From the NCBI RefSeq assembly GCF_001194135.2, contig NC_069003.1, positions 16,922,255 to 16,980,520 on the forward strand: a stretch of 58,266 nucleotides of DNA, given 5' to 3'. The DNA comes from Octopus bimaculoides (taxonomy: Eukaryota). Within the stretch, counting starts at the first letter, position 1, and each line of letters starts with the position of its first letter. Under the pieces are notes generated by a model. That model did no database searches. It was not told the origin of the DNA and was given only the letters and a program-made list of their open reading frames with translations. The position numbers were made by a program, and so were the translations under genes. Of this stretch, positions 25,749 to 58,266 are shown one piece after another.

Positions 25749-26037
25749 TCATTTTGGTGAGGGACTTTTTGTTATTTTTTTTCTCTTTATAGATAATGAC
25801 AAATTTCTTTCGTGCAGACTTTTAGAATCTCGAAGTAGGACATAAACAATCCTCACCCAATTTACTGCTGTTCAGCTGATCCATGCAAATTGGAAAATGA
25901 TGTTGATTTGGGTTTGGTGCAGAGTTCAGAGTTCAGAGTTTCAAGAAAAAAGGACTTGAAAAGGATATGTCTACTACTGAATGCTTACACCAGATTTTGG
26001 CTTGAAAATTGAAAGATAATTGGCTGCAGGTCAACCA

Positions 26038-26067
26038 TCAAGTTTCTAAACCAAATTTCTTCATCAT
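26038..26067 (-). CDS. SLC25A38: SLC25A38-like, terminal coding exon (MMKKFGLET*)
   Basis: Acceptor cttttcttttttacag, phase 0. Resembles the recalled human C-terminus MMAKMGLKS*. Confidence 0.85.
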   Translation of the reverse strand: MMKKFGLET

Positions 26068-51329: not shown

Positions 51330-53040
51330 CATCATCATTTAACGTCCATTTTCCAAGCTGGCATGGGTTGGATGGTTTGACTGAAAACTGGTAAGCTGGA
51401 GAGGTGCACTAGGTTTCAATCTGATCTGGCAGATCAGATTGACATTCAATCTAATGTCAACCACTCCAAGAGTAGTATAGTGGATACTTCTTATGTGCCA
51501 ATAGCATGGGTGCCAGTTACATAGCACCGGCATTGGCCATGATTACAATCTCGCTTGGCTTGACAGGTCATCTCAAGCACGGTAGATTGCCAAAGGTCTT
51601 GGTCACTTTTCACTGCCTCTGTGAGGCCCAACATTCAAATGATGCTTCGTATGTACCACCAGCATGGGTACCAGTTACACAACACTGGCATTGGTCACAA
51701 CTACAATTTCACTTTGCTTGACGAGTCTTAAGCACAGCATATTGCTCAAAATTCAAGGATGCTTTTTATGTGCTAGTTACACGTCACTGGCATCGGCCAT
51801 GACTACAATCTCACTTGGCTTGATGGCTCTTCTCAAGCATGGCATATCACCAAAGGTCTTGGTTATTTGTCATTGCTTCCATGAGGCCCAACATTTGAAG
51901 ATAATGCTTCACCTTGTCCCATGTCTTCCTAGGTCTACCTCTTCCACAGGTTCTCTCCACCATTAGAGTTCAGCACTTCTTCACGCAACTGCCCTCATCC
52001 ATACACATCACATGATCATACCAGCACAGTCATCTCTCTTGCACACCACAATTCATGCCTCTTATGTTCAACTTTTCTCTCAAGACACTTATATTCTGTT
52101 GTGCATGCACACTGATATTACACATCTAGTGAAGCATACTAGCTTCATTTCTTTCAAGCCTAAGCATGTCCTCAGCAGTCACAGACTGTGTTTCACTACC
52201 GTGTAGCATGGCTGTTTGTACACAGGCATCATATAATCTGCCTTTCACTCTGAGGGAGAGGCTCTTAGTTACCAACTGAGTTAGGAGCCCTCTGAACTTT
52301 GCCAAGCCTATTCTTATTCTAGCAGCTATGCTCTTGGAGCATTCATCCCCACAACTGGCTTCGTCATTTAGGTAACGGAAGCTATCAACTACTTCTAGTT
52401 TCTTCCCATGGCATTTGATGGAGTCTATTTTCTATACATTTTTAGTGTTAACTGTACCTGTGCACCTTCCACACACAAAAACTAGTTTCCATATTAACCT
52501 TCCTCTGATATTGCAGCACCTCTTATGTGTCCATAACTTACACTGGGTACGTCTTATAGAGTTTCTACCTACGCATTTTCTACAGATTGAGCAGAGCCAT
52601 CTACCTGAAGGGATTTGTGATTTGTCTGCTCTTCTACATACTAAGACTTTGGATTTTGCTAGATTAACCCTAAGGCCCTTTGATTCTAGACCTTGCTTCC
52701 ATATCTGAAATTTCTTCTCTAGTTCTGGTAATGATTCGGCTAAAAGAACAAGGTCATCAGCATAGAGAAGCTGCCAGGGGCAGCCCATCTTAAATCCCTC
52801 TGTCATTGCCTGGAGGGTTATGATGAACAAGAGGGGGCTGAGGACTGATCCTTGGCGAACCCCTACTTATACCCTAAATTCATCACTATACTTGTTGCTA
52901 ATCTTCACTTGTCTAACAGCATCCCTGTACATGGCTTGTAAAGCCCTCACCAACCACTTGCCTATCCCTAGCTTCCCCATTAACCACCAGATCAGGAGTG
53001 GGAGACTCTGTCCAAGGCTTTCTCCATGTCAACAAAAGCT
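51330..53040 (-). mobile_element. RTE LINE RT-to-3' fragment
   Basis: LLYADDLVLLAES, PHD-like CSICRKCVGRNSIRRTQCKLWTHKRC, and (GAT)n tail at ~51330. Confidence 0.85.
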
Positions 53041-53994: not shown

Positions 53995-54285
53995 TCTTTT
54001 ATCTTTTGCTTGTTTCAATCAATTGACTGCAGCCATGCTGGGGCACCACCAAGAAGAATTTCAGTTGAGTGAAACTTCTAAGTTATGAGAACATAAACAC
54101 ACCAAGACTGGTGGGGGAAAACACAAAGACACAAACATACATATATGATGGGCTTCTTTCAGTTTCCATCTACTAAACCTCCTTGCAAGGTTTTGGTCAT
54201 CCCTCAAGGCTATAGTAAAAACACTTGCCCAAGGTCGCACACAATAGGACTGAACCCAGAACTGAGATTGGAAAGCACAGCCATA
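53995..54285 (-). mobile_element. SINE family A, decayed
   Basis: gggcttctttcagtttccatctac...cacttgcccaagg body shared with other copies. Confidence 0.7.
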
Positions 54286-54341
54286 ACCCAAAGAAAACTA
54301 ATTTCAGTCAAACAAAATGGAATAAGTGAAAATATACTTAC

Positions 54342-54412
54342 CCCAGGTAGGTTTTAAATGAATAGAGCAGTGAGAAATAGATACCAATGCCAGGCACACA
54401 TCTTGTAACAGT
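54342..54412 (-). CDS. SLC25A38: SLC25A38-like exon (TVTRCVPGIGIYFSLLYSFKTYL-G), 71 nt, phase 0/2; most 5' exon found in the window
   Basis: Acceptor (att)n-tttcag and donor gtaagt; RCVPGxGIYF is diagnostic. Confidence 0.95.
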
Positions 54413-54444
54413 CTGAAATAATAATAATAATAATAATAATAATA

Positions 54445-55785
54445 TTTTAAAAAGGATTGACGAAGGTAAATAGTCAAGATGAAGAGCGCGATTCGATTGT
54501 ATAAATGTTTTATTCGTTGAACAATATTTCGACAGTACGTCTGTCTTTGTCAAGTTCAAAACAAAAGGTGATTAAAAATTCAAAATTTCAGAAATCTAAA
54601 CGTAAAATATGAACGAGAGCAACCAGCGTCCATACGTTGATGGAATGACATCATCNNNNNNNNNNNNNNNNNNNNNNNNNNNNNNNNNNNNNNNNNNNNN
54701 NNNNNNNNNNNNNNNNNNNNNNNNNNNNNNNNNNNNNNNNNNNNNNNNNNNNNNNNNNNNNNNNNNNNNNNNNNNNNNNNNNNNNNNNNNNNNNNNNNNN
54801 NNNNNNNNNNNNNNNNNNNNNNNNNNNNNNNNNNNNNNNNNNNNNNNNNNNNNNNNNNNNNNNNNNNNNAAATTGCAGTCGCTTGAAATGAAATGTTCAG
54901 CACATTCTGTTGAACTACTGTTCTTGTGCCTGACGTCGAATTTGTGCCCATTAAACCTTTTGTTTAATTGTTCTGTTGTACAACCAACATAAATCCAGTT
55001 GTGTTTCGTGCATTCTGCAGCGTACACTAAATGGGAATCTTTACAGGTTCCCCCTTCTGTATAAATCATAACATTTCTGTTATGATTTCTGATGGAATTC
55101 ACTTCACTCATGTTGTTGCACAATGAACAGGGCTTACTTCTCTTGCGGCTATTCTTTAAGGTACAGCGTGCAGATACTCCAATGTTTGTTTCCTTGGAGT
55201 CAGATATAGAGGTCAATAATTCTTTTATGCTCTTATTCCGTCAAAAGGCTACAATGGGCGGCTGAGGAAATATCTGTTTTAAACTGGGATATTTTTTCGC
55301 CACATGCTGGTAACTTTCATGCAACACTTTTGAAATGCCAGCGAAACGTCAGTGCCAGCTAATCACTAAAGGAATTCTATCATCTATTGTATTTTGTTTG
55401 CTAAGATTATGCGTGTAGGTTTGACTATCTTTGCTAATCTTAGCTATTTCATTTGCTATTTCCATTAAACGTGATTCACTGTAACCTCGTTTGACATAAT
55501 GACATACAAAAGCATTTGCATGTTTCCAGTAATCCCCTATGTCAGTACAAATCTGTTATCCTCAAAAATTGGGATTTTGGATATGACCGAATAAGATGAT
55601 GTGGATGATCGGAGCGGTGGTGGAGATAAAAAAATCAGATATAGAGGTCAATAATTCTCTAAAAAAAAAAAAGAAATGGAGGAAAACAATTTTGTTGGTA
55701 AGGCTGAATCTAGGATTTTAAGGTCAGAAAGAAGAACACCTGTATTTTATGGTCTCCCTAAAATACACAAAAAGTTCGAAAGACA
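54445..55785 (-). mobile_element. Penelope-like element (3' portion, N gap) with an inverted RT-N-terminal piece at 55660-55785
   Basis: Minus: RIPLVISW...IFPQPPIVAF, CSLC, GIY-YIG LVYAAECTKHNWIYVGCT..LNKRFNGH. Plus: PVFYGLPKIHK. Boundaries are approximate. Confidence 0.85.
54517..54559 (-). ncRNA. Putative minimal type-I hammerhead ribozyme (U3-A8 core variant) in PLE pseudo-LTR
   Basis: UUGAAC-UUGACAA-A-GACAG(ACGUA)CUGUC-GAAA-UA-UU/GUUCAA: 6-bp helix I, 5-bp helix II, minimal palindromic helix III. Confidence 0.75.
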
Positions 55786-55789
55786 TGGA

Positions 55790-57590
55790 AGGAGGACATT
55801 AAACAATGATGATGATGAAGACTATCAGGGAAAATTGTGATGTTGGAGAGAAGTGTGTTTGCATGGACGAAAGTTCACTTGCAGTTAGTGACTCTGTCAG
55901 GAAAGAGGCTTGGAAGTGCCACTATGAAAGGCTACTAAATGTGCAGAACTCATGGGAGAAGGAGAGTCTGCCTATGGTGAATCCAACAGAGGCACAAACA
56001 ATCCAAATAGACAGTAGCTTGATAGATAAAGCCAAGAAGGATATGAAGACTGGGAAAACCCTCAGCCCATCGGGAGTCACCGCTGAGATGCTTAAAACAT
56101 TTGGCAGTGTGGGTTATGGTCTAGTCAAGTGTACAGTTAATCAGGTTGTACACTAGGAAGTCATAACCAATGATTGATGTAGCAGCACCATAGTCAACTG
56201 CTACAAAAGTAAAGGTGATAGAGAGATGATGGCCTTCGACAGGGACCCCCACTCCCTCATTTGGTGGTCAATGTGGAAACTAGGGATAGATTGGTGGTTG
56301 GTGAGAGCTGTACAAGCCATGTAAAGGGATGCTATCAGTAAGGTGAGGGTTGGCAACAAATATAGTGATGAATTCTGAGGACAAGTAGAGGTTCACTAAA
56401 GATCAGTCCTTAGCCTCCTCTTGTTCATCATAGTCCCCCAGGCAATATCAGGAATTTAAGTCAGGCTGCCTCTGGAAGCTCCTCAATGATAATGATCTTG
56501 TTCTTATAACTGAATTAATACAAGAACTAAAGAAATTTCAGGTGTAGAAACAAGGTCTAGAATCAAAGGGCCTTAGATTTAATTTAGCAAAAACCAAAGT
56601 CTTAGTAAGTAGGACAGCGGACAAATCACAAATAGCTTCAGGTAGATGGCCCTAGAAAAGGCATAGGTAGAAACTCTATAACATGCACCTGGTTCAAGCT
56701 ATGGACATATAAGAGATGCATCAATATCAGAGGAATATAGTCTTTGTGTGTATCAGATGCACAGGTACAATAAACACTAGAAATGTAAAGAAAACAGATT
56801 TCATCAAATGCCAGGCGGGGAAAACTAGAAGTAGTTGATAGCTTCTGTTATCTGGGTGACCAAATCAGCAGCAGAGATGGATGCTCAGATAGTGTAGCTG
56901 TTAGAATAAGAATAGGCTGGGCAAAGTTCAGAGAGCTTTTACCTTTGTTGGTAACTAAGGGTCTCTCCCTCAGAGTGAAAGGCTGACTGTATGATGCCTG
57001 TGTGTTAACAGCCATGCTACACAGCAGTAAAACATGGGCTGTGATCACTGAGGATGTGCGTAAGCTTGAAAGAAATGAAGCTAGTATGCTTCGCTAGATG
57101 TGCAATGTCAGTGTGCATGTATGACAGAGTGTAAACATCTCAAGGCATCAGATGTGGTGTGCAAGAGAGATGACTGCACTGGTATGGTCATGGATGAGGT
57201 GGCTGTGTAAAAAAGTGCTGATCTCTAACCGTGGAAGTGATAGACCCAGAAAGACATGGGACAAGGTTGTGAAGCATGATCTTCAAATGTTGGGCCTCAT
57301 GGAGGCAATGACAAGTGACCAAGACCTTTTGTGATATGCTGTGCTTGAGAAAACTCATCAAGCCAAGTGAAATCATAATCATGCCCGATGATGGTGAAAC
57401 ATAACTGGACTTGTGCTAGTGGAACATAAAAAGCACCTATTACACTCTTGGAGTGGTTAGCATTAAGAAGGACATCGAGCCATAGAAACGATGCCAAATC
57501 AGACTGGAACCTGGTGCAGTTCTCTGGCTTACCAGTTCCAGTCAAACTATCTAACCCATGCCAACATGGAAAGCAGATGCTAAACAATGA
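55790..57590 (+). mobile_element. RTE LINE RT region to 3' tail, decayed with deletions
   Basis: RKEAWKCHYERLLNV, DMKTGK..PSGVTAEMLK, FCYLGDQIS, (GAT)n tail at ~57590. Confidence 0.85.
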
Positions 57591-57814
57591 TGATGAAGAG
57601 ATGAGTGTGTGCATATCACCATCATCGTTTAATGTCTGCTTTCCATGCTGGCATGGGTTAGATGGTTAGACATGGAGCTGGCCAGCTGAAAGTTGTCAGA
57701 TTCCAATTGTCAGTTCTGGCATGATTTCTATGGCTGGGTGCCCTTCCTAATGCCAACCACTTAACAGAATGTACTGGGTGCTTTTTACAAGCCACCAGCA
57801 CAATATATTCTGTT

Positions 57815-58010
57815 ATTCTTTTACTTGTTTCAGTCATTTGACTGTGGCCTTAAAGGGTTTTAGTTGAAGAAATTGATCCCAGGACTTGTTCTTTGTAAGC
57901 CTAGTACTTATTCTATCGTACTCTTTTTGCCGCGAACCGCTAATTTATGGGAACCGAAACACATCAGCATCAGTTGTCAAGTGATGGCAGGAGGATAAAC
58001 ACAGACACAT
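57815..58010 (-). mobile_element. SINE family A 3' half
   Basis: ttttacttgtttcagtcatttgactg...aagcctagtacttattctatcg. Confidence 0.75.
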
Positions 58011-58019
58011 AAATATATA

Positions 58020-58266
58020 TATGTAGAAACTCTATAAGATGTACCCAGTGTAAGCTATGGACACATAAGAGGTGCAGCAATATCAAAGGCAGGTTAAGTA
58101 GGAAGTTAGTTTTTGTATGTGGCAGATGTTCAGGTGCAATAAACACTGTACATGTGCAGAAAACAACTTCTGTCTCATTCCAGGGAGAAAAACTAGAAGT
58201 AGTTGATAGCTTCCGCTATCTGGGTGACCAAGTTAGTAGTGGGAGTGGGTGCACTGAAAGTGTAGC
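58020..58266 (+). mobile_element. RTE LINE fragment running off the window edge
   Basis: CTQCKLWTHKRCSNIKG...KLEVVDSFRYLGDQVS. Confidence 0.85.

What the first reader, a model, noticed from the sequence alone, without database searches (positions are those of the whole stretch)
54517..54559. Intact-looking hammerhead ribozyme ~110 nt upstream of an SLC25A38 exon, on the pre-mRNA strand
Seen: perfect helix I (UUGAAC/GUUCAA), core UUGACAA in which the canonical C3-G8 pair is replaced by compensatory U3-A8, an extra A, perfect helix II (GACAG/CUGUC), GAAA, and a palindromic AAUAUU helix III. Predicted cleavage is between 54523 and 54522 (AUU triplet). Established: PLE pseudo-LTRs encode minimal type-I hammerheads, which typically cleave as dimers (Cervera and de la Pena 2014). 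Inference: a retroelement ribozyme placed to cut host pre-mRNA just 5' of the branch region, which could affect splicing or output of a mitochondrial glycine carrier. A monomer may be only weakly active.
Basis: partly seen in the sequence, partly recalled or inferred. Interest (0 to 1): 0.78.

Follow-up and report, generated by a model that had tools for sequence, protein, structure and literature searches.

The report
Retrotransposon hammerhead relic in octopus intron
The 43-base hammerhead ribozyme motif is real, but it is the standard minimal ribozyme at the tail of a dead Penelope-like retrotransposon in an intron of the Octopus bimaculoides SLC25A38 gene, and nothing suggests that it cuts the host transcript.

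Summary
The motif is exactly where and as described: minus strand, 54559-54517. It is far beyond chance: about 2e-4 expected per window for a relaxed descriptor, and 0 hits in 400 random windows. The window is Octopus bimaculoides. The SLC25A38-like gene runs on the minus strand, and its 71-nt exon (54412-54342) starts 110 nt downstream of the predicted cleavage site. Just upstream on the same strand lies a degenerate, 5'-truncated Penelope-like element (PLE): linker plus GIY-YIG endonuclease at 55634-54872, then a 214-N gap, then the tail with the motif. Each "odd" feature is a published hallmark of PLE minimal hammerheads (Cervera and de la Pena 2014): the U3-A8 core, the extra A after A9, G10.1-C11.1, and a loop-less palindromic AUAU helix III. 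A related PLE locus (L005) carries the same U3-A8 architecture with different helix sequences. The functional inference does not. This is a lone monomer with no partner anywhere in the 58.7-kb gene. Published single minimal hammerheads show no detectable cleavage. The element is dead, the sequence is absent from the orthologous intron of O. sinensis, O. vulgaris and Argonauta, and the RefSeq protein models include the exon. This is an ordinary member of a known class, of low interest.

The parts
54517..54559 (-). Minimal type-I hammerhead motif (PLE min-HHR, U3-A8 variant). Helix I 54559-54554 with 54522-54517; core UUGACAA 54553-54547; bulged A 54546; helix II 54545-54541 with 54535-54531; loop 54540-54536; GAAA 54530-54527; UA 54526-54525; U16.1 54524; U17 54523. 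Predicted cleavage between 54523 and 54522.
   Evidence: published consensus in PMC4209133.
54444..54655 (-). PLE 3' untranslated tail, from the assembly gap to the microsatellite. It contains the hammerhead and is specific to O. bimaculoides.
   Evidence: Not alignable with the O. sinensis or O. vulgaris intron. It follows the GIY-YIG fragment across the gap.
54656..54869 (.). Assembly gap of 214 N. It should hide the last ~70 codons of the PLE ORF and the start of the 3' UTR.
   Evidence: The related proteins continue for about 60-70 residues beyond the last aligned residue.
54870..55634 (-). Degenerate, 5'-truncated PLE ORF fragment: the RT-to-EN linker, a CxxC motif and the GIY-YIG endonuclease. 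It carries two in-frame stops and one frameshift.
   Evidence: Pfam GIY-YIG 24.3 bits against a cut-off of 22.6. tblastn with 24 PLE proteins, best E 3e-52. Three-frame translation.
55635..55658 (-). A 24-nt exact copy of internal PLE sequence (the same as 55200-55223). It sits at the head-to-head junction of the two PLE pieces, next to a T12 run.
   Evidence: family D10.
55676..55783 (+). Short inverted PLE piece encoding the RT N-terminal motif (...RTPVFYGLPKIHKKFER). It forms the inverted 5' structure typical of PLE insertions.
   Evidence: tblastn against the L005 PLE ORF, E 7e-8. Structure described in PMC8557442.
54417..54443 (-). (AUU)9 microsatellite between the PLE tail and the 3' splice site. 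It is the probable AT-rich insertion target and part of the U-rich tract of the intron.
   Evidence: PLE preference for AT-rich or microsatellite targets: PMC8557442 and PMC11167929.
54342..54412 (-). Exon of the SLC25A38-like mitochondrial glycine transporter (residues 97-120 of XP_052831839.1).

Best explanation
The motif is the minimal hammerhead ribozyme that Penelope-like retrotransposons carry near their 3' end.

A PLE inserted in the sense orientation into an AT-rich (ATT)n tract just upstream of the 3' splice site of an SLC25A38 intron, in the O. bimaculoides lineage. The copy is 5'-truncated, is joined head-to-head to a small inverted PLE piece, and has since picked up stop codons and a frameshift.

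In an active element, such hammerheads are thought to process tandem PLE transcripts. They act as dimers through an intermolecular helix III, or with help from the PLE protein.

Here the motif is transcribed only as a lone monomer inside the host intron. It has no partner and no working helix III. It is most likely catalytically silent, is removed with the intron, and has no measurable effect on the host gene.

Shown: the motif, its significance, the PLE context, the lack of conservation and the lack of a partner. Inferred: catalytic silence in vivo, and the order of insertion events.
For: - Exact motif, well beyond chance.
- GIY-YIG and PLE linker directly upstream on the same strand, plus an inverted RT N-terminal piece.
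- All the defining min-HHR features are present: a nucleotide between 9 and 10.1, G10.1-C11.1, palindromic 15.2-16.2, no loop 3, and the U3-A8 covariant core. All are described for PLEs in PMC4209133.
- A PLE locus with 41% amino-acid identity (L005) has a hammerhead of the same architecture and U3-A8 core 276 nt after its ORF stop, with different but still paired helices. A third locus (L011) has the C3-G8 form.
- A covariance model built from these three finds only this one site in the window (55 bits, next best 14) and none in the upstream part of the gene.
- The PLE is absent from the O. sinensis, O. vulgaris and Argonauta loci.
- Published single min-HHRs are inactive in vitro. The Anolis PLE hammerhead needs PLE protein and leaves no RNA-seq ends.
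- The exon is present in the RefSeq protein models.
Against: - No experiment or RNA data could be examined, so catalytic silence is inferred.
- The link between the GIY-YIG fragment and the tail runs across a 214-N scaffold gap.
- The gap, and the 3800-N gap further upstream in the intron, could hide a second hammerhead.
- No same-family octopus copies could be retrieved. The age of the copy and true within-family covariation are therefore unknown.
- The three aligned hammerheads were found with a descriptor that demands pairing, so their pair statistics are biased by how they were found.
- There is no clean empty site. O. sinensis and O. vulgaris have their own lineage-specific sequence between the shared LINE and the exon, so loss in that lineage rather than gain in O. 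bimaculoides cannot be excluded.
Confidence: 0.85

Rival explanations
1. The hammerhead is active in the SLC25A38 pre-mRNA, either as a weak monomer, in trans with another PLE transcript, or assisted by PLE protein made by other copies. It cuts the intron 110 nt upstream of the exon and so lowers or modulates output of the glycine carrier.
For: - The motif is intact and on the transcribed strand.
- The core keeps all catalytic residues with a compensated 3-8 pair.
- Protein-assisted cleavage has been shown for one PLE hammerhead (PMC11167929).
Against: - No partner motif was found in the gene.
- The 4-bp all-AU helix III is unstable.
- Single min-HHRs show no detectable cleavage and dimers cleave weakly.
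- No RNA-seq ends were seen even for an active PLE.
- The local PLE ORF is dead.
- The site is not conserved in congeners, which argues against a selected host function.
- The exon is present in the RefSeq protein models.
- From established knowledge, not tested here: slow ribozymes placed in introns generally do not prevent splicing, because the exons stay tethered to the polymerase.
Confidence: 0.04
2. The motif is a chance look-alike in AT-rich intron sequence and has nothing to do with ribozymes.
For: - Rfam hammerhead models give no hit.
- The motif departs from the canonical core at three points.
Against: - The expectation is 2e-4 per window even for a relaxed descriptor, and 1e-7 for a hit this good.
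- It sits in the sense orientation downstream of a PLE endonuclease ORF.
- The three 'departures' are exactly the published PLE min-HHR traits.
- Rfam also misses the control PLE min-HHRs.
Confidence: 0.01
3. [quoted passage not shown] It supplies the branch site and part of the pyrimidine tract for this exon in O. bimaculoides, and the two stable hairpin helices act at most as RNA structure near the branch point. This is compatible with the best explanation and adds a host-side consequence.
For: - Similarity to O. sinensis and O. vulgaris resumes only about 12 nt upstream of the 3' splice site, so any branch point must lie in O. bimaculoides-specific sequence.
- Candidate yUnAy sites (cuugAc, ucaAu) lie between the motif and the (AUU)9 tract.
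- The exon is present in the RefSeq protein models.
Against: - No branch-point mapping or RNA data is available.
- This would be a passive consequence of where the element landed, not evidence of selection.
Confidence: 0.3

Closest known systems
Minimal hammerheads (min-HHRs) of metazoan Penelope-like elements (Cervera and de la Pena 2014, PMC4209133), including the U3-A8 variant of Schistosoma Cercyon elements
   Same: - Type-I topology and the catalytic boxes.
- An unpaired nucleotide between A9 and 10.1.
- The G10.1-C11.1 pair.
- Helix I of 4-6 bp.
- No loop 3, with palindromic 15.2-16.2.
- The U3-A8 covariant core.
- Location near the 3' end of a PLE with a GIY-YIG endonuclease.
- Mostly found as single motifs attached to truncated PLEs.
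   Different: - The host is a cephalopod, and I found no mention of cephalopod PLE hammerheads in the papers read.
- Helix II has 5 bp, against 7-8 bp in the main Schistosoma families.
- The PLE family is only 33-44% identical in protein to anything retrieved.
Poseidon PLE hammerhead of Anolis carolinensis (PAc; PMC11167929)
   Same: A PLE-borne hammerhead with no activity on its own. The element targets AT-rich DNA.
   Different: - The PAc motif overlaps the ORF start in the pLTR and has the C3-G8 core.
- Its cleavage was shown biochemically, and only with PLE protein. Nothing was tested here.
Conserved intronic hammerheads of amniotes (HH9, HH10; Rfam RF02275, RF02277)
   Same: They lie in the sense orientation inside introns of protein-coding genes.
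   Different: - Those are canonical hammerheads with a stable helix III and loop-loop contacts.
- They are active as monomers and ultraconserved across species.
- This one is minimal, lacks helix III, gives no Rfam match and is absent from congeners.
Viroid hammerhead with an extra nucleotide after A9 (De la Pena and Flores 2001, as cited in PMC4209133)
   Same: An extra unpaired residue between A9 and G10.1 that is tolerated by an active hammerhead.
   Different: It is a type-III viroid ribozyme with full helices and is unrelated to retroelements.

Membership tests
PLE minimal hammerhead (min-HHR) | Catalytic boxes: (C/U)3 U4 G5 A6 N7 (G/A)8 A9, then G12 A13 A14, with positions 3 and 8 able to pair | tested here: met
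   UUGACAA ... GAAA. The U3-A8 form is the variant documented in PMC4209133.
PLE minimal hammerhead (min-HHR) | [quoted passage not shown] | tested here: met
   A at 54546. The same A is present in L005 and L011.
PLE minimal hammerhead (min-HHR) | G10.1-C11.1 closing pair, helix II of at least 4 bp, and helix I of about 4-6 bp open at its ends (type I) | tested here: met
   GACAG/CUGUC and UUGAAC/GUUCAA, all Watson-Crick.
PLE minimal hammerhead (min-HHR) | No loop 3; positions 15.1-15.2 and 16.2-16.1 palindromic so that two copies can build helix III; U16.1 and H17 at the cleavage site | tested here: met
   GAA-AUAU-U then G; the triplet is AUU. The duplex alone is +1.6 kcal/mol.
PLE minimal hammerhead (min-HHR) | Lies in the pLTR or 3' end of a Penelope-like element, on the sense strand | tested here: met
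   It lies 313 nt (including the 214-N gap) downstream of the GIY-YIG fragment on the same strand. The L005 counterpart lies 276 nt after its ORF stop. Caveat: the link crosses a scaffold gap.
PLE minimal hammerhead (min-HHR) | Compensatory changes across copies of the family | tested here: inconclusive
   Across three PLE-linked motifs, 8 of 11 pairs change on both sides and 94% of cells are paired. However, there are only three sequences, they come from different PLE families, and they were found with a descriptor that requires pairing. No same-family octopus copies were obtainable.
PLE minimal hammerhead (min-HHR) | Self-cleavage, as a dimer or with protein assistance | not testable with these tools
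   Needs in vitro transcription and cleavage assays, or mapping of RNA ends.
Canonical type-I hammerhead (Rfam Hammerhead_1 RF00163; intronic HH9/HH10) | Match to the curated covariance models; a stable helix III; loop-loop tertiary contacts | tested here: not met
   No hammerhead family hit even at E<=10. Helix III is absent. Helix I has no loop or bulge to dock on loop 2.
Penelope-like element (canonical, C-terminal EN) | GIY-YIG endonuclease C-terminal to a PLE-type RT, joined by the conserved linker | tested here: met
   GIY-YIG scores above Pfam's cut-off. Linker and EN align to 24 PLE proteins. Of the RT, only a short inverted N-terminal piece is present, because the copy is 5'-truncated. 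The clade (Penelope/Poseidon, Neptune or Nematis) was not determined.
SLC25A38 (mitochondrial glycine transporter) host gene | Orthology of the flanking exon | tested here: met
   100% match to O. bimaculoides XP_052831839.1 residues 97-120. Best hits are all annotated as mitochondrial glycine transporter, Pfam Mito_carr.

The most novel reading that the evidence does not exclude
A lone PLE min-HHR in the sense orientation, 110 nt upstream of an exon, is cleaved in vivo. This could happen with help from PLE protein made by other copies, or by pairing with other PLE transcripts. It would make expression of the O. bimaculoides mitochondrial glycine carrier depend on retrotransposon activity. That would be a lineage-specific, ribozyme-based coupling between transposon load and a host metabolic gene.
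Probability: 0.03. Interest if true: 0.6.

Novelty: new member of a known kind. Interest (0 to 1): 0.15.

Why it matters
It matters little for biology at large. It is one more of the thousands of minimal hammerheads that Penelope-like elements scatter through invertebrate genomes.

It has three modest uses:
- It shows that the U3-A8 core variant, first described in Schistosoma Cercyon elements, also occurs in a cephalopod PLE and in a related PLE from a marine assembly. That argues the variant is inherited and functional at the element level, and is not decay of a C3-G8 core.
- It shows that the Rfam hammerhead models miss this whole class.
- It documents a PLE tail that now forms the last ~200 nt of a host intron, right up to the splice acceptor.

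If the ribozyme did cut in vivo, it would be a natural test case for what an intronic self-cleaver does to splicing.

Tried and rejected
- Rfam scans of the window at gathering threshold, and of 54200-54660 at E<=10, found no hammerhead. I rejected this as evidence against the motif, because Rfam also misses the L005 and L011 PLE min-HHRs.
- I looked for other copies of the 43-mer or its 356-nt surroundings in the window and in four cephalopod loci. There were none, so no within-genome family alignment was possible.
- I tried to align the orthologous introns of O. sinensis and O. vulgaris. Only the last ~12 nt and the exon align. There is no clean empty site, because those species carry different sequence between the shared LINE and the exon.
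- Protein searches for close relatives of the PLE found at best 44% identity, mostly on contigs of 1-4 kb.
- The JGI metagenome scan gave 8 loci, and only one had a descriptor hit.
- Three further loci (L015-L017) gave no hammerhead with either the descriptor or the covariance model. Their tails may be too short, or their motifs too different.
- A MAFFT alignment of the window tail against the L005 tail misregistered the two hammerheads and showed no flank homology.
- A weak model hit at 26048-26009 (E 1.1) shares the L005 helix II sequence, but no PLE lies nearby. I treated it as chance.
- A second PLE in the same gene (L003 12428-13900, outside the window) was checked as a possible dimer partner. 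No hammerhead was found in its tail.

Full report
**What is there.** On the minus strand, 54559-54517 reads UUGAAC-UUGACAA-A-GACAG-ACGUA-CUGUC-GAAA-UA-U-U-GUUCAA. In standard hammerhead numbering this gives:
- a 6-bp helix I;
- a core U3 U4 G5 A6 C7 A8 A9;
- one extra A;
- a 5-bp helix II that opens with G10.1-C11.1 and closes a 5-nt loop;
- G12 A13 A14, then A15.1 U15.2 A16.2 U16.1, then U17;
- the 3' strand of helix I.

The only correction is that the palindrome available for an intermolecular helix III is AUAU, not AAUAUU. The minimum-free-energy fold forms helices I and II, with pair probabilities near 1.

**Is it more than chance?** I wrote a relaxed descriptor:
- either the C3-G8 or the U3-A8 core;
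- 0-1 extra nucleotide;
- helix II of at least 4 bp, with G·U allowed;
- a loop of 3-9 nt;
- a palindromic helix III insert of 0-6 nt;
- helix I of at least 4 bp.

It hits only this site in the window and in four cephalopod loci. It gave no hit in 400 random windows of the same dinucleotide make-up. The analytic expectation is 2.2e-4 per window for the relaxed descriptor and 1e-7 for a hit as good as this one, or 0.005 per 2.7-Gb genome. Chance is excluded.

**Where the window comes from, and the host gene.**
- The region is 100% identical to Octopus bimaculoides chromosome CM046623.1 (locus L003).
- tblastn and a protein search identify an SLC25A38-type mitochondrial glycine transporter on the minus strand.
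- The O. bimaculoides RefSeq protein contains ...GLWKGLAP|TVTRCVPGIGIYFSLLYSFKTYLG|SDAPT.... The middle segment is encoded at 54412-54342.
- The exon therefore starts 110 nt downstream of the predicted cleavage site, on the same strand.

**What surrounds the motif.**
- Upstream on the minus strand, across a 214-N assembly gap (54656-54869), lies an ORF fragment with a GIY-YIG domain. It scores 24.3 bits in Pfam, above the 22.6 cut-off.
- Before that lies the linker typical of Penelope-like elements (...RIPLVISWH*RFAGISKVLHESYQHVAKKYPSLKQIFPQPPIVAF*RNKSIKELL...).
- Twenty-four PLE proteins from public assemblies align to 55634-54872, with E down to 3e-52.
- The fragment has two in-frame stops and a frameshift near 55556. 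It starts in the linker, so the copy is 5'-truncated and dead.
- A short inverted piece encoding the PLE RT N-terminal motif (RTPVFYGLPKIHKKFER) abuts it on the plus strand at 55676-55783.
- A 24-nt exact copy of internal PLE sequence sits at the junction.
- Such inverted 5'-truncated partners, hammerheads near the 3' end, and a bias for AT-rich or microsatellite targets are all described for PLEs (PMC8557442; PMC11167929).
- The tail here runs into an (AUU)9 tract (54443-54417) that ends 4 nt from the splice acceptor.

**Comparison with the published class.** Cervera and de la Pena 2014 (PMC4209133) define the metazoan PLE min-HHR by:
- the catalytic boxes;
- a highly conserved G10.1-C11.1;
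- palindromic 15.2-16.2 with no loop 3;
- a short helix I.

They also report a U3-A8 covariant core in Schistosoma Cercyon elements, with about 1,300 hits.

Rfam has no model for it. The window gives no hammerhead hit even at E<=10, and neither do two control PLE min-HHRs.

**Related copies.** No nucleotide collection of eukaryotic genomes was available, so same-family octopus copies could not be collected. I used the PLE protein to fetch related loci.
- L005 carries a PLE whose EN region is 41% identical. 276 nt after its ORF stop, on the sense strand, it has UUAUGA-UUGAUAA-A-GGUUG-AAUUG-CAGCC-GAAA-UA-U-U-UCAUGA. That is the same architecture, the same U3-A8 core and the same bulged A, with entirely different but still paired helices. 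About 130 nt further on comes a (TA)n tract.
- L011 has a C3-G8 version. It lies about 1.9 kb downstream of the protein match, so its link to that ORF is looser.
- Across the three, 8 of 11 pairs change on both sides and 94% of cells pair. I give this little weight, because the motifs were found with a descriptor that demands pairing.
- The recurrence of U3-A8 in two PLEs that are only ~41% identical in protein argues that this core is an inherited, element-level feature. It does not look like C-to-U and G-to-A decay.
- A covariance model built from the three scores the candidate at 55 bits. Nothing else in the window exceeds 14 bits, and nothing in the upstream part of the gene exceeds 12 bits.

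**Conservation.**
- In O. sinensis (L002) and O. vulgaris (L004), the exon and the last ~12 nt of the intron are 97.5% identical to O. bimaculoides.
- The ~230 nt that hold the motif cannot be aligned.
- No PLE is detectable in those loci or in Argonauta hians (L001).
- The intron is about 10 kb in O. bimaculoides, including gaps, against about 1 kb in O. sinensis.
- The simplest reading is a lineage-specific insertion. A clean empty site is not available, because the other species carry their own sequence between a shared LINE fragment and the exon. Loss in their lineage therefore cannot be strictly excluded.

**How it most likely works, or does not.**
- In an active PLE, the hammerhead is proposed to process multimeric element transcripts, acting as a dimer. 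In vitro, single min-HHRs gave no detectable cleavage and dimers gave low activity.
- The Anolis Poseidon hammerhead cleaved only when PLE protein was present, was dispensable for insertion in vitro, and left no RNA-seq ends at its site.
- Here the motif is a lone monomer. No partner exists in the window or the rest of the gene, although two assembly gaps could hide one.
- The four A-U pairs of a dimeric helix III are unstable on their own (+1.6 kcal/mol).
- The local ORF is dead, and the RefSeq protein models include the exon.

I conclude that the motif is a structurally intact but functionally silent relic that leaves with the intron. The confidence of 0.85 that I report applies to this combined statement. 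Within it, I rate the PLE origin at about 0.95 and in situ silence at about 0.85.

A passive consequence is worth noting. Homology to congeners resumes only ~12 nt before the acceptor, so the branch site of this exon in O. bimaculoides must lie inside the PLE tail, downstream of the motif.

**Verdict.** The identification as a PLE minimal type-I hammerhead is confirmed. The proposed effect on SLC25A38 pre-mRNA is unsupported and unlikely. This is a new member of a well-described kind, of low interest.

Noticed in passing
window 54412-58266 and L003 22297-32362, against L002 7570-8586: The intron that holds the motif is about 10 kb in O. bimaculoides (including 3800 and 214 N) but only about 1 kb in O. 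sinensis. The difference is a pile-up of LINE, PLE and SINE sequence.
   Followed up: partly
window 54417-54520: Similarity to O. sinensis and O. vulgaris resumes only ~12 nt upstream of the 3' splice site. The branch site and most of the U-rich tract of this exon in O. bimaculoides must therefore be supplied by the PLE tail and the (AUU)9 microsatellite.
   Followed up: no
window 55200-55223 and 55635-55658: An exact 24-nt direct repeat. An internal PLE sequence (encoding KELLTSISD) is duplicated at the head-to-head junction of the sense and inverted PLE pieces, next to a T12 run. It may be a template-switch scar from insertion.
   Followed up: partly
window 52000-53000 and 56200-57200 (also 58020-58266): Inverted copies, 77-88% identical, of a non-LTR retrotransposon encoding RVT_1 and a C-terminal PHD-like cysteine-rich finger. 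The 56651-56994 part is 92-93% identical to the O. sinensis and O. vulgaris intron, so it is probably orthologous.
   Followed up: partly
L003 12428-13900 (outside the window, same gene, sense strand): A second, unrelated PLE with RT and EN (24-32% identity to the same protein set). No hammerhead was detectable in its tail with the descriptor or the covariance model.
   Followed up: partly
window 26009-26048 (-): A weak covariance-model hit (14 bits, E 1.1) whose helix II (GGUUG...CAGCC) is identical to that of the L005 hammerhead. The core is broken and no PLE coding sequence lies nearby. It is probably chance, or possibly a decayed relic.
   Followed up: partly
window 57541-57671 and 55783-55818: Octopus SINE-like sequence (...CATGGAAAGCAGATGCTAAACAATGATGATGA...) arranged as a 56-nt inverted repeat with a 19-nt spacer. 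Related pieces occur at several other places in the window.
   Followed up: no
L005 4020-4062 and L011 2386-2428: The Rfam release 15 hammerhead models detect neither of these PLE min-HHRs even at E<=10. The whole min-HHR class appears to be invisible to Rfam-based annotation.
   Followed up: yes
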